From: Paraphysomonas bandaiensis
Lineage: Eukaryota; Protista; Chrysophyceae
Direction: 5' to 3'
Length of the DNA: 64,000 nt
Assembly: GCA_965644295.1 (NCBI GenBank)
Contig: CBFFRP010000284.1
Location: forward strand, 124,001 to 188,000
Below, piece after piece: positions 1 through 55,812 of the stretch. The translations under genes and the position numbers were made by a program. Below the pieces are notes generated by a model. It saw nothing but the letters and a program-made list of their open reading frames with translations, was not told the origin of the DNA and ran no database searches. Every line of letters starts with the position of its first letter. Position 1 is the first letter of the stretch.

Positions 1-265
1 TGACAACTATGTTAGATACACTTTCTGAATATGAAAAATTCCCAACCTCGCTCGTTTTCACCAGAATAAAACTTCTGAAAAATTTGAATAGCTTCATCCT
101 GCAGTATTCCAGACTCAATTTCATAAGGAGAAGGACTACATCACTGGTGAGTCATGTTTCAAGTTGCCATTTGCATTACCTCTCATGGTGAAGAGACAGA
201 ATCGATCCATTTCCTCCAAATCGTGTATTATGACAACCAAATATAACTTTCCGTACACCTACTCT
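1..265 (-). repeat. Exact direct duplicate of 1119-1383 (3' part of the ADAT2 gene); partial tandem duplication with a 1118-bp period
   Basis: 1-265 matches 1119-1383; ORFs 9..191 and 1070..1309 give the same peptide at offset 1118. Identity ends at CTCT, where the sequence switches into the retroposon. Confidence 0.9.
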
Positions 266-2537: not shown

Positions 2538-5500
2538 ATGGATGATGGATGCTCCAATGAGACTAATCCATCAATCACTTTCCAGACGACATCAAGCTGT
2601 GGGTCAGTGCGGAGGTCTCAGAGGAATCCTAATGATGCTCTTCTAACTCGATCAGATGTCAAAAGACTCGTAGAGAAAGTTAAAGGGTACAGTGCCGCGG
2701 CCGCTGTTCGTTATTTGTGTTTTAATTGTAGTTGTTTTTAGAAATCATCCGGATACAGTGGTGTTTAAAATTAAGGAGATGATAATGGCGGATATCAGCC
2801 CGGCTGTGTTTGATCAAGTGCTGCTGTCTTTTGAAAAAAACACTGTGTGTCAGGCGATGTACATACAAAACCTTTCACTCGCGATTCGCGACGAACAGCT
2901 TCGACACTTAATTGAACTGTTGAAAACCAAAATGATATGGTGCTTAAATATTGGTGAAAATTATGAAGTGTCGAAGTCCTGTTGGTTGGAGTTTTGCAAT
3001 GCCTTGCCTTCTACCAACATAACGCACCTATACGTCTCCGAGCATGTGATTCCAATTGAGCTTAAGAACAAGATGCGAGAAAATATTCGGTGAGTATTAA
3101 GTTGTATTGTTGTTTAGATTCTTGAGTGATATACCTGCATAGAAATAACCGTAAAAAGCACGACATGCATTCTTCGATCCGTAATATAAAGGTTATATCG
3201 CGGTGTACCAATATGTGGTGGAACCCGATCAATGCCATCAAGCATCAGATAGAAAGCCTTGGGTCTTATGGAAGTGGAGCTAAGACCAAAAAACAAAAGG
3301 CTGATGCTGGAGAGAGAACCGTTTCCGCGGCTCAATTGCTAAGTGAGAACCCATCCCATCCTGCGTACTGGGCAGAAGGGTGCGGAGGTAAAGGGGCAGA
3401 AACGCCCTGGACCTTCAACTGCATATGCAAGGAAATGTGTTCTTCCTATGAGAACTATCGGTATCATCCCACCGGCCCCATGTATGAGTGCACTGACTGT
3501 AAGGTCTGGAGTCATACTGAGTGCATGCTGGGTAAGGTTAGCAATGAGGACCTAGAAGAGCTTACGGTGAGCATGTCGCTGCTACTCTCTCTGTTGTTTA
3601 ATGCTATTCATGAAAGGTGTTGCATTGCAAAAAGTGTGCTGCACGAGTCCGACGACAGAACTTGGCTGTATTACGAGGGATGAATATGGAATGGAAAGAT
3701 GGTCGCGCTAGAAGCAACAGCAGCCTGTCAAACTGTGAGGGTACTCTTGAAGCTGATCGCTGTAAAACAGAGTGCGATGTTGGTCACAGTAATGGCGGGA
3801 ACGAGAATGTTGACAAGCACAACGAGGGAAAGGTAGAGGCCTCCGTAACACAGGGGGGAAGTGGCACAGAGTCCCTTGGTAAGCGAGGGGATTGTGATCA
3901 TTCGTTATTATCAGACGCAACGTCGGACCTTCCGATACCTACCGCAGTGGATTCTCCGACGAAGAGATACAGGCCTACACCTAATCCACATGATAATGTA
4001 CACACGAAGCCACTTCCTATGTTTACTGACTTCCATTTGGACACGTGTGCCGCAACTAATTCACTCTGTGAGGAGCCCGAGCTTGCTCGCAGCGAAGATA
4101 TATCTGGATCTACGGATATAGCAGAATCATACTTTGAGAGAGACTGTGCTGTGAGCATGACTTCACCGATCACTGCCACAAGCAGCCCTCAGCTCCACCC
4201 AAGCAATATGGAGCTGGATGTAACGGATATAACCTTACCTGCACCTGCGGTTTTGGATTGCAACCCAGTGGTTACAGGCCCTGATCGAACCACATGCTCT
4301 GATACTCCCGCTCTCACCCTCACCGTGCCTGAATTGACAGCACAGCAGTCTATATTATCTGTAGAGTCGGAGCCGATTGCTCCAGAGTGTGACGTGGATA
4401 CGAAGTTGCTGACCTCGGGTGTGGCAAATATGAGAACAGGTGATGTTGATGCATCTACTGCATCCGACAGAAATTCTGGGACCACACCGGCCTCTGCGAA
4501 TGCGATATCTACTGTACCAACTGGCCACATATCAGGCGGTCCAATTTTGTCAACAACTGCCCCGTCGTCTTCGTCATCTTCAACATCTTTTCTTTCTGAC
4601 AGCAGAATGCTGTTGAGCACAACTCACACAGCATCTCCGCAGCAATCGCTGCAGAAAGGAATTAATGGCGGAGGGGCTTTCCCTCTACTGACTTCTATCC
4701 TCTCCGCCACAGGGGCAGGAAATGGAAGTCCTGTACCAGGCGATGCTGGAGGAGTAGCGGATATGTCGTACTACCCACTCCGTGATCTCACTAGTCTCAC
4801 ACCAACCATGGACACAATCCCGACCACGTTAAGCACAGTATCTACCGCTGCCGTTACTGCCCCAACACGAAAACTCTCTGTATCATCTCCGTCTAAAACT
4901 GCTCGGTCGAGGTCAGGTAGTGGACAGTCAGTTCGCAGCGCTCAAGGGAGCAAAAACAATTTTGGTTTTGACTCATCCAAAAATGGTTGTCAGACGACTA
5001 TCAATGGAAAGGACGTCGCCGAAAAGAAATCCGGTAGTAGTGCAGCCGCAAGTAGCTCTCGAAAGAAAAGTAACGGTGTGAAATCACCTACAGGAGCTAA
5101 GACTTCTAGAAAGTCATCGACAGGAACGACAAAGGCCAGAGCTGCAACTTTGGATGGTTCTACGACAACGAGTAAGACAACAAATAGAACTGGACAGCTC
5201 GATGCGGGTGTCGGAAAGTACAGCAACGATTCTGTGAAGCATATTAAGAAAGGGCCCGCCGCTGTCCAGGCTATTAAGTCAGAGCTGATCAGAGTTAGTA
5301 GTGCTGTGGCGAACAACGCACACCCTTCAATGACTTTGTCTGAAGCTACTTCGGCGTCGATCAGTCAGGGACAGCCGCGAGATGCTCCTACATCGTCTTC
5401 ATCGAATCAAACCGTTGATCGGGCGGCGGGCCCCACACCAGCCAATTCTGATACAGGAGGCAGTCTAAGTAATGTGAGATCTCTTGTTGATACAATTGTG

Positions 5501-6667
5501 AATGGTGCCATGGTAGTTGCGAACTCAAGGGCTGCTAGTACCATGAAATCTACCGATGATGCCTCGGCAGCGAGTTTGTTGAATGGTAACGAAAGTGGAA
5601 TATCCACAGATGACAAATCGCCGAAAACATGTACTAGCAAGACTGCCTCAAAGCAAAGAGCGGGCTATACGGGTAGGAAAAAAACGGATGCATCTCTGAA
5701 CGGGTCAAGCTCAGACTGTGGCTCTCTACAAGCTTCTGGTAGTGATTTACCTGTTCAAGACGCTAAGAATCAGGAGCCAAGTCGTACTAAGAATTCAGGG
5801 AAGAACTCATGTAAATCTGCATGTACCTCCCCAAGGTCGATAGGTGCGCAGAAGAAGGAGCCGAAAACTACCACTGTTGAATTTGCTCTAAAGTCGCAAG
5901 TATCGGGATCGGTTCCTCCTTTTAAGAAAAAGCGTACTTCCAAAGGAGCCAATTTCCGAATGTTTACACGTGTTTGGCTTCCTGCTTTCAAGATGGAGGG
6001 TAAGATCGTTGAAGAGAAAAATGGAGGATGGAAATACGTGCAATTTGATGTAGGTATTCCTCTTCCTCTACCACCGTCACTTGCATCATTTGTGCCCCAT
6101 TCCCCTCGTTTAAATAAGGGAGTCTTAGATGGCAAGTGGTGTCGTGCATGTGACATGGAGGAGATAGCATGCAATGGCAATAATGGCGCATCGAAAGCAG
6201 ACTCTAAAAGCTGTGATAGATATGGTAGCGATGAGGATGGGGATAATGACAGCACTCGAAGCGATTGTGAGGATGGCAACGTATCGAGCAACATGGGTAG
6301 AAATGGGGGAAGTTACCGCTTTCACTCAGCAGGGTCTAGGTATGACGACCATGTTCCTGGGGAAGACATGGAAACTGGCGAAACGGACGACACGGAATTC
6401 AGTGTGATGAAACGAAAGCGTGATAGGGCAGATAGTATGGATGCTGGGAGTAGCGTGTTCTTCAACAGCAGCATGAGTCCATCTGAGCGCGAGGTCGTCT
6501 TTGCACTTGGTATGAATACTAATCTTGAAGATTCGATGACTGGTAGGGGAGTGTCTGTTGCGATGGGCAGCGCAGCCACCATGGATGATGTGGGTTGGCA
6601 TGCAGTGAATGTTATGGAATATGGCGGTTTTGGTCTTGACGATGAACCCGATGACTGGAACCTATGA
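2538..6667 (+). CDS. PHD-finger protein with an N-terminal LRR-like region and a long Ser/Thr-rich disordered tail (4 exons)
   Basis: Introns ~2687-2741, 3090-3142 and 3567-3616 join the ORFs in frame and build the PHD pattern CICK...ECTDCKVWSHTEC...|VLHCKKC. A small beta-rich segment FTRVWLPAFKMEGKIVEEKNGGWKYVQFD lies near the C-terminus. Confidence 0.8.
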
Positions 6668-7342
6668 ACGAGACATCGGAAGATGTTAGTATCCTGTTGT
6701 TATTGTCCCTTGTATATTAGTCGCTTTATCGTTAATTACCGACAAGAAAGAGTACATGTAGTTAGCATTTTACGACAGGTTTTAGCGCCACGCCCTCATA
6801 CCATCCTTATCCATTGTGTTAATTAGTGCCCTACACTTGAGTAATAATGCAAAAATGCGAAAGCATATTTAATATCAACCTTGGTGGCACTTTCGTTTGT
6901 AGTGGGTGAAGCGCGAAAATGAAACAGAAAATGATAACTGTTTAGAGTTTTGCCCATTTTATCACTGGGATCGTTGAACGGAAGTTAACTCTTCAGACTA
7001 GACAGGTTTTTCTTTTGCATACACAATTGTGCCATTGCATGAAGTACATCGCAACATAGTTTTAGCTGTGATATAGCAACCACTGTTGAATTATTGTATC
7101 TGCAATTGTCATGATGTATTTAACGAATGGGATATATTATTGGACCTAGCCCAGTAGACGCAATAAAGTGGTGTAAAAACCTAAGTAAATATTCATATTT
7201 GCAATTAACACTTTTACTAGGTAGACTAGATGTTTATAGCAGGGCTGCGTAACAATTAATTGCAATTATTAGCTATAGCTCGCGCAAGTTTTATTGCAAT
7301 TAATTGCAATTTAATAGTGCCAAATTAACTTAATTACTTATT

Positions 7343-7429
7343 CCCTCAACAAAGTCGGACTCGCACCTTTTCGTGGTGTTCTGGGGGATAAGTACCGGAG
7401 TTATTTCTCTGGGAAACTAACGTGAGCCG
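7343..7429 (+). ncRNA. Putative HDV-like (L1Tc/ingi signature-type) ribozyme at the retroposon 5' end
   Basis: P1 CCCTCAAC/GTTCTGGG (2 mismatches); P2 CGG-A-CTCGC/GTGAGCCG; P3 ACC/GGT with L3 TTTTCGT; P4 CCGGAG/CTCTGG; J4/2 CTAA with candidate catalytic C at 7417. Confidence 0.6.
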
Positions 7430-7827
7430 CAAGCATAGTCAGCAGATATTCTTCTGCCCACTCATAGCCGAATGCTTGTGTGGCACAAGGGACACCAATA
7501 AGTGTCACTTGTGTAGACGTCTTTGGGTCCTGACGAATAAACAGGCATCCGGGACAGGGCCCACCTGAAGGGTAATAACCGGGGTATTGGGCTGCCTGCT
7601 GAAGTCAAGCATCCGGGATGTTCACCTTAAGAACTCAGAGCGGAAGTGGCCGCACCTTGGTGCTTGCGGCGACGCACAAGCAGCTTCCGTAGCGTTAAAT
7701 AGTAGGATAAAAAAAGTGTGTACTGATTAGTTACATGTAGACGTCTAACTAGTTTGTCTAGCACTCATCTAGCTACTAAGTTGGTGCAGGTTTTTAACGC
7801 CTATTGCTAATAATAAGACTTTCCATA
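7343..7827 (+). mobile_element. Ingi-like short retroposon, copy 2 (full length, 485 bp), nested in the hAT element
   Basis: Starts CCCTCAAC and ends AGACTTTCCATA. 12-bp TSD TAATTACTTATT (7331-7342) / TAATTACTCATT (7828-7839). Confidence 0.9.
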
Positions 7828-7830
7828 TAA

Positions 7831-8230
7831 TTACTCATTACGAGCAAGTCTAGAATCTTTAATCGTACTTGAATTCCACAGAAATTTATTAAAGCGCAAG
7901 AACATAGGGGACTCTAATCGATGAGGTGCCATAGATTTGCGCAGATCACTCATGTTAATTTTTGCTCTACAAAACACCCTTTCTACACAAATAGTAGTGG
8001 AGTAAATATGCTTCAAGCAGCGGTACTTAGTTAGTTTTTGGTAGTTTGCAGTCGGTTTTGTTCTTGGTGCGCTTGGTGTCTTCTCGCCAGTGAGTCAACA
8101 CCATCATCTTCTTTTTTCTCTCCTTCATCAGTTATGTCCAACAAAAAACGTTTGAGTTGCGCCTTCTCAGGTCGAGTGAGAGTGTCCTCCAACCCGCTTT
8201 GGACTTTCACGACCGTACAAAGAACGCAGT
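7831..8230 (-). pseudogene. hAT transposase C-terminal (dimerisation domain) remnant
   Basis: TTICVERVFCRAKINMSDLRKSMAPHRLESPMFLRFNKFLW fits the hAT dimerisation consensus (S..ERxFS.A......R..L.P...E...FL..N). Upstream VVKVQSGLEDTLTRPEK is in a shifted frame. Confidence 0.75.
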
Positions 8231-26787: not shown

Positions 26788-27276
26788 ATATATATTGAAA
26801 GTCTTATTATTAGCAATAGGCGTTAAAAACCTGCACCAACTTAGTAGCTAGATGAATGCTAGACAAACTAGTTAGACCTCTACCTGTAACTAATGAGTAC
26901 ACACTTTTTTTATCCTACTATTTAACGCTACGGAAGCTGCTTGTGCGTCGCCGCAAGCACCAAGGTGCGACCACTTCCGCTCTGAGTTTTTAAGGTGAAC
27001 ATCCCGGATGCTTGACTTCAGCAGGCAGCCCAATACCCCGGTTACCCTTGAGGTGGGCCCATTCCCGGATGCCTATTTATTCGTCGGGGCCCAAAGACGT
27101 CTACACAAGTGACACTTATTGGTGTCCCTTGTGCCACACAAGCATTCGGCTATGAGTGGGCAGAAGAATATCTGCTGACTATATGTTTTCGGCTCACGTT
27201 ACTTTCCCAGAGAAGTCTCTCCGGTACTTATCTCCCAGAACACCACGAAAAGGGACGAGTCCGACTGTGTTGAGGG
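26788..27276 (-). mobile_element. Ingi-like short retroposon, copy 3 (full length, 489 bp)
   Basis: Reverse complement of copy 2. Perfect 13-bp TSD AAAGAAAAGTGAT (26775-26787 / 27277-27289) and an (AT)n tail. Confidence 0.92.
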
Positions 27277-27519
27277 AAAGAAAAGTGATGTCGTTTTATT
27301 ATTGCATAGACAATTGTGTGGTTCTTGTAACGCATATCGTATGTATCAGAATAGCTCATTTAAAGAATTCTACTGCTTATTTTATTAAAACTGAATTACC
27401 TTTTTCTAGTGACAGAAAACACTTATTTACGATTAAAATAACAGAGCAAACGGGCAAACGTGACACTTAACAAAATTCGGTGAACTATGGTCCAGAAAAA
27501 CGGCTTGCACGTAATGAAA

Positions 27520-37686: not shown

Positions 37687-39648
37687 ATGAAATTATCAGT
37701 GAACACCAACACCCTTATCGACTACTACATCCTAACATACTCACAGGTCATATGATGCGGAGTGATTGTATATATAGGATTGTGTAGGATATGATTGCAT
37801 GTGTAGGATATGAGTGTTCTTATATGGCATGATTGTCTGTATATGATCGCATGCATGTCTGTGATTGCCTGTATATGGCATGATTGTCTGTATATGATCG
37901 CATGCATGCCTGTGATTGCCTGTATATGGCATGATTGTCTGTATATGATCGCATGCATGCCTGTGATTGCCTGTATATGGCATGATTGTCTGTATATGAT
38001 CGCATGCATGCCTGTGATTGCCTGTATATGGCATGATTGTATCATTACGGATGTAAAAGAGGGTTGTATAGGATATGATTTTCTATATATATAGGATTGT
38101 ATGGATAATGATTAATGTGTATAATATGATTGTATGGGATATGAATATTCAACGATATGATTGTGTATGATGACTGTCTGTATATGGAATGATTGTATAT
38201 ATTATTACATGTATAGGATATGATTGAATGTATTATATATGATTGAATGCATGTAACATGATTGTATAGGATTTGATTTCATGTATAGGATATGGCGCAT
38301 GTATAGGATATTGTTACATGTATGTAATCGGTCTAATATTTGGTTTTCAGATTTCACTTAAACTTTTGGTCCTTGCAATGTCTCTTGCCCTATGTGGTTA
38401 TATGTGTTGTCTCGTTACTGTTATACGGATCCCTTCGTATGTGTTGGATTGTGACGCACTCTTTCACCTCGTTATGTCAGTGTCATTCTTTCCTAGCGTT
38501 ATCAGCATATCTAGTTGTCGGGCTAAAGCGACTACTGTGTCAAGAGTTATACATATTTGCAGTCTAGTTGGAGCCGTGTGCGTTGTCTGCGTACTATGGG
38601 GGCGTGCGACTATGCGGACGGTCTACGCATTAACGCGCCCAGCTGAGAGGTATGGGCTAGAGACGGGCAGGGTGTCCCAAGTTATTGTCACCAATACCGT
38701 TAGCCTCTTCTTATCGTTGGTGTTGGCTGTCTGTTTCCTATACAGAGACTCGCTGCTGACACAGTGCTGTTATACACCCCCTGGAACGAGGTGAGCACAT
38801 CAGTACTGCAGGTGGCAAATATAAAATTGTCTATAGTTCCCCAGAGCATGAAACTGCTGATGACGATGAAAACAGTGAAGTCAGACCACTGGGTGTTTCT
38901 CAGTCAATTACATACGGATCTGCCGCCCCTCCATCCCACTCTCGTCTCCTACGCTTGCACGAGGTAAGACTCCGATAACTCTCTCATATTTTCGTGTAAA
39001 GGTCTAATGCAGGTAGGTGATCGTGTTCTGTGTCGTAGTGGGCGTGGACGAGGCAGAAGGTGGTACAGAGCCACTGTGGCGGCGGTACATGTTCCGCAGG
39101 ATGGAATTACTGGAGTTTATGATGTTGTTTATGCTGACGGAGAGATCGAGAGGTTCAAGTCACCGCTGGATGTATGCGTAGGGAACAGAGAAACAACAGG
39201 TGGTGATTCTGTCTCATCTGGGCTCTTCTTAGCAGAGGGACCGGGGCGTGTTAGCATGTGGTTGCGAGCGGTCTATGTTCACATGGCACTATCTGTGTTT
39301 ACTATCTGCCTTCTGTCGGCCTCTTACATCAATTCCATGTCCCCTCAAGACACTCTGGCGTATACTACTAGGGTATTCTTAGGATGTTATTTTTCGTTGG
39401 CGTTTTGCTATCTTACTACCATAGCGGTAGTTATCTTGGCGGTATTTCGAGACGTCGGAGTTGTAATGACTGGAGTATTCAAAAGCTCTCAAAGCTGTAC
39501 GAAGGTATGTGTGTGTGATCATGGAACGTGTACTTCCACTTACATTGTCTGAATACAGTTGGCTCTGGGTGTCATTGAAAGCATAGTAGGTGTGCCAATG
39601 CAACCACAGCTGTCGAGCACGAAGTCTGTAGAAATGTTTATACTGTAA
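37687..39648 (+). CDS. Multi-pass membrane protein with an internal Tudor/Agenet-like domain (5 exons)
   Basis: Exon 1 MKLSVNTNTLIDYYILTYSQ splices in frame over 37747-38350 to ISLKLLVLAMS. Several TM helices. VGDRVLCRSGRGRGRRWYRATVAAV...YDVVYADGEIE is Tudor-like. Confidence 0.65.
37821..38040. repeat. 51-bp minisatellite (4.3 units) within degenerate TAGGATATGATTG repeats (~37770-38330)
   Basis: Unit TATATGGCATGATTGTCTGTATATGATCGCATGCATGCCTGTGATTGCCTG at 37821, 37872, 37923, 37974 and a partial unit at 38025. Confidence 0.95.
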
Positions 39649-55295: not shown

Positions 55296-55812
55296 TATAT
55301 GAAAGTTTTATTAGTAGTAGTAAGAGGCGTTAAGAATCTCCACCAGTTTAGTAGCAAGATGAATACTAGTCAATAAGCTATCTACCTGAAACTAACTAGT
55401 GCTTAACCTTGATATCTTACTATTTAACGCTACGAAAGGTTATTGTGCAACCACCTCCGCTCTATCACTCAAACTCAGAGCAAACGCAGTGAGAATGCAT
55501 CTGCTGACTTCAGGATTTTTGAGTCCTTAAGATGAACATCCTGAATGCTTGACTTCAGCAGGCAGCCCAATACCCCGGATTCCCTTGAGGTGGGCCCATT
55601 AAAGGATACGTGTTTATTCGTCAGGGCTCAAAGACGTCTACAGACAGTACTTATTGTTGTTTCTTATACCACACAAGCATTCGGCTATGAGTGGGCAGAA
55701 CAATATCTGCTGTCTATGTTTTCGGCTCACGTTAGTTTTCCGGAGAAATATCTCCGGTACTTATCCCCCACCAGAACACCATGAAAAGGTGCGAGTCCGA
55801 CTTTCTTGAGGG
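55296..55812 (-). mobile_element. Ingi-like short retroposon, copy 6 (full length)
   Basis: TSD CATTGACGT(A/G)TATA (55282-55295 / 55813-55826), (AT)n tail, 5' CCCTCAAG and a perfect P4 hairpin CCGGAGA/TCTCCGG. Confidence 0.9.

What the first reader, a model, noticed from the sequence alone, without database searches (positions are those of the whole stretch)
7343..7429. HDV-like ribozyme resembling the trypanosome ingi/L1Tc 77-79 bp signature at the 5' end of a short retroposon in a non-kinetoplastid protist
Seen: full-length copies begin CCCTCAAC-AAAGTCGGACTCG-CACC-TTTTCGT-GGTG-TTCTGGGG-GATA-AGTAC-CGGAG..CTCYGG-RAAACTAAC-GTGAGCCG. This folds as a nested double pseudoknot: P2 CGG(A)CTCGC/GTGAGCCG, P3 ACC/GGT with a 7-nt U..CGU loop, a P4 hairpin whose stem is kept while the loop differs in 3 copies, and J4/2 CUAA. 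Known (recalled from memory): the L1Tc/NARTc/ingi/RIME/SIDER 5' signature CCCTGGC..CACC-TCAACGT-GGTG-CCAGGG..AGTAC..GGAAGCTAAG is an HDV-like ribozyme and internal promoter. The CCC start, CACC-T...CGT-GGTG, AGTAC and GGAA.CTAA blocks line up in order. Inference: an ingi-clade ribozyme-headed SINE in a stramenopile. Caveats: P1 has two mismatches, there is one extra nt in J4/2, and the candidate catalytic C is kept in copies 2, 5 and 6 but mutated in 1 and 3.
Basis: partly seen in the sequence, partly recalled or inferred. Interest (0 to 1): 0.9.

Follow-up and report, generated by a model that had tools for sequence, protein, structure and literature searches.

The report
Ribozyme-headed short retroposon (SINE)
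A 487-base mobile element, present in roughly two thousand copies in this marine protist genome, begins exactly with a sequence that matches the catalytic core of hepatitis-delta-like self-cutting RNAs, so it probably trims its own 5' end out of longer transcripts before borrowing a neighbouring LINE's machinery to copy itself.

Summary
Window 7343-7429 is the first 87 nt of a 487-bp non-coding retroposon (7343-7829) with 10-15 bp target-site duplications, no poly(A), and about 1,900 head copies in the 62.5-Mb genome, many of them identical.

The head carries the full HDV-like ribozyme core: P3 ACC/GGU, L3 U...CGU, AUAAGUAC, GGAAACUAA with the catalytic C at 7417, and a stable P2 and P4. A covariance model built only from unrelated metagenomic ribozymes scores it 47 bits (E 5e-12), within the 30-62 bit range of held-out members. 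The predicted cleavage site coincides with the element's first base.

Two corrections:
- The "Pr77-like" blocks are the generic core of a widespread HDV-like class, found on LINE 5' ends and after phage tRNAs. They are not an ingi signature.
- The two LINE families that share the SINE's 3' 190 nt lack this head.

P1 is better drawn as 6 contiguous pairs (CCCUCA/UGGGGG). That leaves 3-4 surplus nt between P3 and P1, seen in none of 79 reference ribozymes.

Descent from an HDV-like ribozyme is near certain. Catalytic activity is probable (about 0.6) but untested. I class it as a new variant of a known kind.

The parts
7331..7342 (.). left target-site duplication TAATTACTTATT
   Evidence: Repeated as TAATTACTCATT at 7828-7839. 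Comparable 10-15 bp duplications abut CCCTC in L004, L005, L012, L016, L019 and L023.
7343..7829 (+). whole non-autonomous retroposon (SINE-like), 485-487 bp; the last 2 nt are ambiguous with the duplication
   Evidence: The boundaries are shared by 30 genomic copies (q301-787; alignment). There is no ORF. Pol III is unlikely: T4 at element positions 26-29 and T5 at 449-453, and no tRNA, 5S or 7SL hit in Rfam.
7343..7348 (+). P1 5' strand CCCUCA; predicted cleavage is immediately 5' of C7343
   Evidence: Pairs with 7382-7387 in the RNAfold MFE and centroid. Duplex energy -9.8 kcal/mol. C7343 is the first base after the target duplication.
7356..7364 (+). P2 5' strand CGG(A)CUCGC
   Evidence: Pairs with 7422-7429, 8 bp plus one bulged A. 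Aligned as P2 by model R1. Duplex -11.2 kcal/mol, against a reference median of -7.6.
7365..7377 (+). P3 ACC/GGU enclosing L3 UUUUCGU; U7370 (third L3 base) can form the 1-bp P1.1 with A7388
   Evidence: These columns are invariant in the reference set. The third L3 base covaries with the first J1/4 base in the reference sequences (U-A, G-C, C-G; read).
7378..7381 (+). surplus GUUC between P3 and P1 (or a 2-nt bulge if C8-G36 and A7-U37 also pair)
   Evidence: The GGU-to-AGUAC spacing is 13 nt here, against 9-11 nt in 79 of 81 unique reference ribozymes. Model R1 places a 3-nt insertion here.
7382..7387 (+). P1 3' strand UGGGGG
7388..7395 (+). J1/4 AUAAGUAC
   Evidence: Identical to several reference ribozymes (L065, L098, L131, L148). 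AGUAC is invariant.
7396..7411 (+). P4 hairpin CGGAG-UUAUUU-CUCUG
   Evidence: The stem is kept in three subfamilies that differ at the apex. Three of the six diagnostic differences between subfamilies a and c lie here.
7412..7421 (+). GGAAA + J4/2 CUAA + C; the candidate catalytic cytosine is C7417
   Evidence: GGAA.CUAA is invariant in the reference set. The catalytic C is the first position of J4/2 in HDV-like ribozymes (PMC10879173).
7422..7429 (+). P2 3' strand GUGAGCCG
7640..7829 (+). LINE-derived 3' tail, the presumed recognition site for the partner reverse transcriptase
   Evidence: 83-86% identical to the last ~190 nt of LINE-X (5.58 kb) and LINE-Y (8.49 kb). The alignment has 88% mean column identity and includes a near-invariant block of about 70 nt.
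7828..7839 (.). right target-site duplication TAATTACTCATT
26791..27278 (-). second full-length copy in the window; the candidate catalytic C is mutated (GUAA)
   Evidence: Inverted-repeat pairs I1, I3 and I7. R1 hit at 27190-27272, 29.6 bits. Sequence.
55381..55812 (-). third, older copy (~88% identical); core intact, with a 3-nt insertion in the G run
   Evidence: R1 hit at 55723-55808, 34.4 bits.

Best explanation
Window 7343-7829 is one copy of a very abundant, recently active, non-coding retroposon. It is built from three modules: an 87-nt head that is an HDV-like self-cleaving ribozyme, an unassigned body of about 210 nt, and a 190-nt tail copied from the 3' end of resident APE+RT LINEs (LINE-X and LINE-Y).

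Proposed cycle:
1. The element has no Pol III promoter and contains T-runs, so it is transcribed as part of longer Pol II or read-through transcripts. This step is inferred.
2. The head folds into the nested double pseudoknot: P1 7343-48/7382-87, P2 7356-64/7422-29, P3 7365-67/7375-77, a 1-bp P1.1 U7370-A7388, and P4 7396-7411. C7417 catalyses cleavage just 5' of C7343, giving an RNA that starts at the element's first base. The fold and the coincidence with the element boundary are shown. Catalysis is inferred.
3. A LINE-X/Y reverse transcriptase recognises the shared tail and inserts a copy by target-primed reverse transcription, making 10-15 bp duplications. The shared tail and the duplications are shown. 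The recognition step is inferred.

The ribozyme belongs to a widespread class with the core ACC-U...CGU-GGU / AGUAC / GGAA.CUAA. That class also includes the trypanosomatid Pr77/L1Tc ribozymes, LINE-borne ribozymes in metagenomes, and phage tRNA-associated ribozymes. The head differs from them by 3-4 extra nt at the P3/P1 junction.
For: Core match is not chance. The pattern occurs once in the window against 0 in 100 shuffles, and 393 times in the genome against 0 for the reversed control.

Model R1 was built from 26 metagenomic ribozymes only.
- It scores the SINE heads 47 bits, E 5e-12, over the full model length.
- Held-out canonical members score 30-62 bits.
- Two chance pattern hits score 18-28 bits.

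The reference set is a genuine structured RNA.
- Covariation score 0.749 against 0.197 in shuffles, 0 of 500 reaching it.
- All 7 P2 pairs and all 4 P4 pairs show double-sided changes.
- Its members sit where ribozymes are expected: a tandem APE+RT LINE in L131 and directly after a tRNA in L107.

The SINE helices are as stable as the reference ones: P1 -9.8 against a median of -10.5, P2 -11.2 against -7.6 kcal/mol. RNAfold itself predicts P1, P3 and P4.

The base predicted to be +1, which pairs with the G just before AUA-AGUAC, is the first base after the target duplication in independent insertions.

Young, identical heads all keep the core. Subfamilies differ in the P4 apex but keep the stem.

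The tail is shared with LINE-X and LINE-Y, which encode APE and RT. Family sequences are present in poly(A) marine metatranscriptome assemblies.
Against: - No cleavage data exist. The RNA runs available were assembled contigs, which cannot show 5' ends.
- The GGU-to-AGUAC spacing of 13 nt occurs in none of the 79 good reference ribozymes, which have 9-11 nt. No canonical-spacing version exists in this genome. The architecture is therefore untested.
- Published work shows that Pr77-type candidates with 'adequate folding' can be inactive in vitro (TcoSIDER1beta, TbSIDER1beta; PMC4035085).
- The R1 score is partly circular, because the reference set was fished with a pattern that the SINE matches. 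Only the P2, P4 and spacing terms are independent.
- The MFE z-score of the head is 0.0.
- Rfam gives no hit, but it also misses 14 canonical reference examples.
- Genomic copies are neutral relics, so covariation within the family is uninformative.
Confidence: 0.6

Rival explanations
1. Ribozyme relic. The head descends from an HDV-like ribozyme, but the 3-4 nt expansion at the P3/P1 junction has killed or crippled catalysis. The exact 5' end at C7343 is instead set by transcription initiation from an internal Pol II promoter in the head, as Pr77 does in T. cruzi.
For: - The atypical spacing is unique among about 80 references.
- Well-folding Pr77-type candidates can be inactive.
- The CGTG motif that acts as a downstream promoter element at +25 to +28 in Pr77 (PMC4748587) lies at +30 to +33 here.
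- The partner LINEs manage without a ribozyme.
Against: - About 1,900 heads, including many identical young ones, keep every core nucleotide, a stable P1 and P2, and a compensated P4.
- The boundary coincides to the base with the predicted cleavage site.
- No promoter evidence exists outside trypanosomatids.
- CGUG is an obligatory part of the ribozyme core, so its presence says nothing about a promoter.
Confidence: 0.27
2. Ingi/L1Tc-clade origin. The head is a true Pr77 homologue inherited or transferred together with an ingi-clade LINE, and the SINE is a RIME/NARTc/SIDER-type deletion derivative of that LINE.
For: Block-by-block resemblance to published Pr77 sequences of T. congolense, T. 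vivax and Leishmania. This includes the C1-G start of P1, the single-bp P1.1, and CUAA plus one further nucleotide.
Against: - The same blocks occur in about 80 unrelated metagenomic ribozymes, including phage ones.
- LINE-X and LINE-Y share only the tail, not the head or body.
- Two further LINE families sampled have no head within 8-9 kb upstream of the RT.
- There is no poly(A) tail.
- No RNase H was detected in the partner LINEs.
- The SINE body matches no LINE.
Confidence: 0.08
3. Ordinary Pol III SINE, or a chance resemblance. The head is a small-RNA-derived promoter and the 'ribozyme' is pattern-seeking.
For: The sharp 5' end and high copy number are typical of SINEs. A one-mismatch B-box-like word exists, but on the antisense strand and at chance level.
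Against: - No tRNA, 5S, 7SL or snRNA match at E<=10.
- T4 and T5 runs inside the element.
- Core pattern found 393 times against 0 in the control.
- R1 E-value 5e-12.
Confidence: 0.03

Closest known systems
L1Tc/NARTc/ingi/RIME/SIDER Pr77 hallmark = L1TcRz HDV-like ribozyme (Sanchez-Luque et al. 2011, 2014; PMC3185411, PMC4035085)
   Same: - The ribozyme is the first ~80 nt of a retroposon, with cleavage 5' of +1.
- C1-G base pair at the cleavage site, and a single-bp P1.1.
- Shared core blocks ACC-U...CGU-GGU, AGUAC and GGAA.CUAA(+1 nt).
- Also carried by short non-coding derivatives.
   Different: - Here the head is on the non-autonomous element only; the partner LINEs lack it.
- No poly(A) tail.
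- 13-nt rather than 10-nt spacing between P3 and AGUAC.
- Different host lineage.
- Promoter function is unknown here.
HDV-like ribozymes at the 5' ends of R2, RTE, Baggins and other non-LTR elements, and R2 SIDEs (Eickbush & Eickbush 2010; Ruminski et al. 2011, both cited in PMC10879173; PMC3414825)
   Same: Self-cleavage releases the element RNA from a co-transcript and defines its 5' end. Non-autonomous derivatives that keep the ribozyme and the 3' RT-binding region are known (R2 SIDEs). The metagenomic LINE in L131 is an example with the same core as this head.
   Different: R2 SIDEs are internal deletions of their own LINE. This SINE is a chimera whose head and body are not found in the LINEs that supply its tail.
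Minimal HDV-like / theta ribozymes next to phage tRNAs (Kienbeck et al. 2024, PMC10879173)
   Same: Same compact architecture and core nucleotides. L107 and L151 in my reference set sit directly after tRNAs.
   Different: The context differs: tRNA 3' processing in phages against a retroposon 5' end in a eukaryote. The P1/P3 junction is canonical in the phage ribozymes.
Ribozyme-bearing SINE-like elements of Schistosoma (Sm-alpha hammerhead; twister variants of non-LTR elements, PMC8501958)
   Same: Abundant short retroposons that use a small self-cleaving ribozyme instead of, or besides, a promoter-defined 5' end.
   Different: A different ribozyme class (hammerhead or twister).

Membership tests
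HDV-like self-cleaving ribozymes | Strand order P1-P2-P3-L3-P3'-P1'-J1/4-P4-J4/2-P2' (nested double pseudoknot) | tested here: met
   All helices lie in the right order.
HDV-like self-cleaving ribozymes | 3-bp P3 with a 7-nt L3 (U...CGU), and a P1.1 contact to the first J1/4 base | tested here: met
   ACC/UUUUCGU/GGU, with U7370-A7388. This follows the covariation rule seen in the reference set.
HDV-like self-cleaving ribozymes | Cytosine at the first position of J4/2 (the general acid) | tested here: met
   C7417 within CUAA. It is kept in 393 exact-core genomic copies. The rule is taken from PMC10879173.
HDV-like self-cleaving ribozymes | P1 of about 7 bp running straight on from P3' (GGU-to-AGUAC spacing of 9-11 nt in this class) | tested here: not met
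   The spacing is 13 nt: a 6-bp P1 plus 3-4 surplus nt, or 8 bp with a 2-nt bulge. None of 79 references has this. P1 stability itself is normal.
HDV-like self-cleaving ribozymes | Significant score against a family covariance model | tested here: inconclusive
   No Rfam hit, but Rfam also misses 14 canonical class members. My own model R1 gives 47 bits, E 5e-12, inside the held-out range. That score is partly circular, because the reference set was fished with a pattern shared with the SINE.
HDV-like self-cleaving ribozymes | Site-specific self-cleavage that depends on divalent metal and the catalytic C | not testable with these tools
   Only assembled contigs of RNA runs were available.
Retroposon 5'-terminal ribozyme (R2 / L1Tc type) | The predicted cleavage site coincides with the element's 5' boundary | tested here: met
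   Target duplications abut C1 in L001, L005, L012, L016, L019 and L023. C1 pairs with the G that precedes AUA-AGUAC.
Trypanosomatid Pr77 / ingi-L1Tc clade | The same hallmark heads the autonomous LINE and its short derivatives | tested here: not met
   The LINE-X and LINE-Y 5' ends lack it. No head lies upstream of the RT in two further LINE families.
Trypanosomatid Pr77 / ingi-L1Tc clade | Signature blocks specific to the clade | tested here: not met
   The blocks recur in about 80 unrelated metagenomic ribozymes.
Trypanosomatid Pr77 / ingi-L1Tc clade | Partner LINE with APE-RT-RNase H and a poly(A) tail; RT groups with ingi | tested here: inconclusive
   APE and RT are present, plus a SET domain. 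No RNase H by Pfam at E<=5. No poly(A) tail. An RT phylogeny was not possible because no reference RT set was available.
SINE (LINE-dependent non-autonomous retroposon) | Short, non-coding, flanked by target duplications, with a 3' tail shared with a resident LINE | tested here: met
SINE (LINE-dependent non-autonomous retroposon) | Pol III promoter head derived from tRNA, 7SL or 5S | tested here: not met
   No such Rfam match. Internal T4 and T5 runs.

The most novel reading that the evidence does not exclude
A SINE class in which a self-cleaving HDV-like ribozyme replaces the Pol III promoter as the 5' module. The ribozyme was acquired independently of the LINEs that mobilise the element, and those LINEs are themselves unusual SET-domain LINEs. 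The ribozyme would be a functional new architectural variant with an expanded P3/P1 junction. With about 1,900 copies scattered through a marine stramenopile genome, it would also cut any host transcript that reads through a copy.
Probability: 0.45. Interest if true: 0.65.

Novelty: new variant of a known kind. Interest (0 to 1): 0.55.

Why it matters
Ribozyme-headed retroposons are known from trypanosomatids, insects (R2) and flatworms. This would extend them to a marine stramenopile-type protist, with an exceptionally large and young family.

Three points go beyond a new host:
- The ribozyme sits on a chimeric SINE whose partner LINEs lack it. This shows that a ribozyme can be recruited as a free-standing '5'-end module'.
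- The expanded P3/P1 junction is an easily testable probe of what the HDV fold tolerates.
- Roughly 1,900 potential self-cleavage sites in a 62-Mb genome could shape mRNA 3' ends and stability, as proposed for Leishmania SIDERs.

As a by-product, a simple core pattern recovers about 80 covarying HDV-like ribozymes that Rfam 15 does not detect.

Tried and rejected
- **Rfam.** The gathering and E<=10 scans gave no ribozyme hit. I reject this as evidence, because Rfam also misses canonical class members.
- **RNA-seq.** All runs offered were assembled contigs. They show that the family is present in poly(A) metatranscriptomes and that the upstream gene's transcript ends near 6870. They give no 5' ends or junction information, and contigs break at repeat edges anyway.
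- **Covariation within the SINE family.** Copies are neutral and 92-100% alike, so this is uninformative.
- **Search for a LINE with the head.** LINE-X, LINE-Y and two other LINE families were negative. The exact-pattern and CM scans of the genome found only SINE-type heads.
- **LINE clade assignment.** The homologue search returned only unnamed metagenomic relatives. No RNase H was found.
- **Species identification.** The flanking gene matches only an unnamed MMETSP/JGI/EukProt transcript. The atlas search said only 'eukaryote'. A proteasome ATPase points to ochrophyte stramenopiles.
- **MFE z-score of the head.** It is 0.0. This is not meaningful for a pseudoknot.
- **Antisense B-box-like word.** Chance level, p about 0.1.
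- **Metagenome contigs.** None shares the SINE body.
- **Human-DNA rules.** L069 is labelled as a human-skin metagenome contig, but it is a near-duplicate of soil contigs (L059, L075). I did not take it for human DNA. It was used only in the bulk pattern and model tables.

Full report
**1. What is there.** It is the beginning of a dispersed repeat.
- With 300-400 nt of flank added, 30 genomic copies align to the window copy from exactly 7343 to about 7829 and nowhere beyond.
- In the multiple alignment the copies start at the same C of CCCTCAAC and end at ...TAATAATAAGACTTTCAATAT(A). They are flanked by 10-15 bp direct duplications of the target. Examples are TAATTACTYATT in the window copy, TATATGAGCTT in L004 and GCCCAAGCGGT in L019.
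- The element is therefore about 487 bp, not about 370. The A7 run at 7709-7715 is internal and there is no terminal poly(A).
- It has no ORF and no match to tRNA, 5S, 7SL or snRNA models at E<=10. It contains T4 and T5 runs that argue against Pol III transcription.
- Copy number is high. There are 3,283 first-look candidates for the whole element and 1,897 for the first 90 nt, with 13 of the 40 scored heads 100% identical. The core pattern has 393 exact occurrences against 0 for the reversed control.
- Two more full or near-full copies lie in the window on the minus strand, at 26791-27278 and about 55381-55812, together with several fragments.

**2. Who mobilises it.** Reverse-transcriptase hits in the genome led to two LINE families, each defined by pairs of independent insertions.
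- LINE-Y is 8.49 kb with a single 2,746-aa frame. LINE-X is 5.58 kb with a 1,780-aa frame.
- Both encode an APE endonuclease and an RT. LINE-Y also carries a SET domain.
- Their last ~190 nt are 83-86% identical to SINE positions 295-487. The alignment includes a nearly invariant block of about 70 nt and the same terminal ...GCCTATTGCTAA-TAA-AGAC-TTCA motif.
- This is the classical signature of a LINE/SINE pair of the 'stringent' type, in which the RT recognises a specific 3' tail.
- Neither LINE shares the SINE's head or body. Their 5' ends read ACTGGGCGTACTGG... and GCTGACAAAAGAGG.... For LINE-Y, at least 40 copies reach that same 5' end.

**3. Is the head an HDV-like ribozyme?** I first obtained real Pr77 sequences from the literature: L1Tc primers (PMC3185411), and T. 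congolense L1Tco/NARTco, T. vivax SIDER1/ingi and Leishmania SIDER2A (supplement of PMC4035085).

I then turned those shared blocks into a pattern and scanned public metagenomes.
- The scan returned 102 loci, 81 of them unique.
- Nearly all fold as compact, canonical HDV-like ribozymes whose P1, P2 and P4 covary freely.
- On a 26-sequence alignment, P2 and P4 give a covariation score of 0.749 against 0.197 in shuffles (0 of 500 reaching it). All 11 variable pairs show double-sided changes.
- Contexts are those expected of real ribozymes. L131 has two copies 5.85 kb apart bracketing an APE+RT ORF, which is a tandem LINE. L107 has one directly after a tRNA in a tRNA array, the 'theta' context of PMC10879173.
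- Rfam 15 detects none of 14 such examples, so its silence on the SINE means nothing.

**4. How well does the SINE head fit that class?** A covariance model (R1) was built only from 26 metagenomic members, with P2, P3 and P4 as pairs.
- R1 finds the SINE heads over its full length at 47 bits, E 5e-12.
- Held-out canonical members score 30-62 bits. The two pattern hits that look like chance (L094, L100) score 28 and 18 bits.
- The score is partly circular, since the reference set was selected with a pattern the SINE satisfies. The P2, P4 and spacing terms are independent of that.
- P2 is 8 bp with one bulge (-11.2 kcal/mol; reference median -7.6).
- P1 is best drawn as six contiguous pairs, C1-A6 with U40-G45 (-9.8; reference median -10.5).
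- The third L3 base (U7370) can pair with the first J1/4 base (A7388). This follows the single-pair P1.1 rule that covaries across the reference sequences (U-A, G-C, C-G), and L1TcRz is also described with a one-pair P1.1.
- The catalytic-position cytosine is C7417.
- The extra nucleotide after CUAA is ordinary for the class.

**5. The element boundary.** The nucleotide predicted to be +1, the partner of the G immediately before AUA-AGUAC, is the first base of the element as defined by target duplications in independent insertions.

**6. What does not fit.** The distance from P3' (GGU) to AGUAC is 13 nt in the SINE. It is 10 nt in 63, 9 nt in 11 and 11 nt in 5 of the 81 unique references, and the only other outliers are the two chance hits.
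- R1 accordingly inserts 3 nt in the P1' region.
- The surplus (7378-7381, GUUC) is either an unpaired linker between P3 and a 6-bp P1, or a 2-nt bulge in an 8-bp P1 (C8-G36, A7-U37).
- It is present in every subfamily I saw, including old ones. The genome holds no canonical-spacing version apart from two obvious deletion derivatives.
- Published assays warn that Pr77-type candidates with acceptable folds can be inactive, and that a mismatch at C1 or a short P2 cripples activity (PMC4035085).
- Activity therefore cannot be asserted from sequence.
- In its favour, about 1,900 copies, many identical, all begin at C1 and all carry this version of the head. Subfamily-diagnostic changes in the head fall only in the P4 apex and preserve the stem.

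**7. RNA evidence.** The runs holding this stretch are marine poly(A) metatranscriptomes and cultures of the source organism, but all are stored as assembled contigs.
- They show the upstream gene's transcript ending near 6870.
- They show the SINE family present in RNA libraries, with no coverage of the unique flank at 6909-7169.
- They cannot show starts, ends or strand, and contigs break at repeat edges regardless.
- This evidence is neutral.

**8. Host.** The flanking gene matches only an unnamed MMETSP/JGI/EukProt transcript. A proteasome ATPase in the window has its closest named homologues, at 92% identity, in chrysophyte stramenopiles (Mallomonas, Spumella). Together with the marine poly(A) metatranscriptome holders, this agrees with 'non-kinetoplastid, probably stramenopile'. 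The species was not identified.

**9. Verdict.**
- The head descends from an HDV-like ribozyme: I hold this at about 0.95.
- The element is a LINE-X/Y-dependent SINE: about 0.85.
- The ribozyme is catalytically active and defines the 5' end: about 0.6.
- The main rival (about 0.27) is a relic ribozyme whose position now coincides with an internal Pol II start. CGTG, the Pr77 downstream promoter element (PMC4748587), lies at +30 to +33, but it is also an obligatory part of the ribozyme core.
- The ingi-clade reading is not supported. The signature is generic, the partner LINEs lack the head, there is no poly(A), and no RNase H was detected. An RT phylogeny could not be done.

Other first-stage notes on this genome describe the same family. 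They are unchecked and were used only as a lead to look for the partner LINE.

**10. Limits.**
- R1's E-values are rough because calibration was shortened.
- The reference set was ascertained with a pattern shared with the SINE.

Noticed in passing
L050+L056 (G000:C433:106088-114573, minus) and L045+L053 (G000:C440:3935-12421, minus): LINE-Y is an 8.49-kb non-LTR element with one 2,746-aa frame. It carries a SET (histone-lysine methyltransferase-type) domain at aa 820-924, upstream of the APE and RT domains. At least 40 copies share its 5' 400 nt at 97-100% identity. Relatives with the same SET+APE+RT layout exist in ENA metagenome assemblies (P0003, 2,805 aa, 37% identity; P0004). A full-text search found no paper describing SET-domain LINEs.
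   Followed up: partly
L046+L054 (G000:C143) and L047+L055 (G000:C394): LINE-X (5.58 kb, copies 99.5% identical) looks like a LINE-Y relative that lacks the first ~2.9 kb. Its frame is open from its very first nucleotide, and the APE domain begins about 24 aa in. Its positions 47-398 are about 70% identical to an internal part of LINE-Y.
   Followed up: partly
L057-L158 (metagenome contigs): The pattern ACCTNNNCGTGGT-N6-16-AGTAC-N8-38-GGAANCTAA recovers about 80 unique compact HDV-like ribozymes with strong P1/P2/P4 covariation, from soil, moss, rumen, ectomycorrhiza and TARA ocean samples. Rfam 15 reports none of the 14 I tested. Several contigs hold extra copies that miss the exact pattern but score with model R1, for example L131 6019-6091, L059 9622-9699 and L075 9102-9177.
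   Followed up: partly
L107:573-722 and L065: In L107 the ribozyme (649-722) starts 4 nt after a tRNA (573-645) within an array of seven tRNAs, which is the theta-ribozyme context. L065 carries the ribozyme at 700-770, a sub-threshold GOLLD RNA match (1136-1549, 56 bits) and a weak twister-P1 match.
   Followed up: no
window 1-265 and 1119-1383; window 37770-38075: A 265-nt direct repeat, 100% identical and 1,118 nt apart, at the window start overlaps an older SINE copy (about 262-783). There is also a tandem array of five to six 51-nt units at 37770-38075.
   Followed up: no
window 3617-6870: The gene upstream of the SINE has a 1,016-aa ORF in the window but a 1,323-aa MMETSP protein, so it continues 5' or is spliced. 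It is covered without mismatches by RNA contigs that end near 6850-6872. The SINE therefore lies about 470 nt beyond that transcript's 3' end, not inside it.
   Followed up: partly
G000:C169:171632-184454 (minus); C181:36359-37749; C148:53165-54350: There are clusters of two to four identical SINE heads within 1-13 kb on one strand, possibly tandem or nested insertions or segmental duplication.
   Followed up: no
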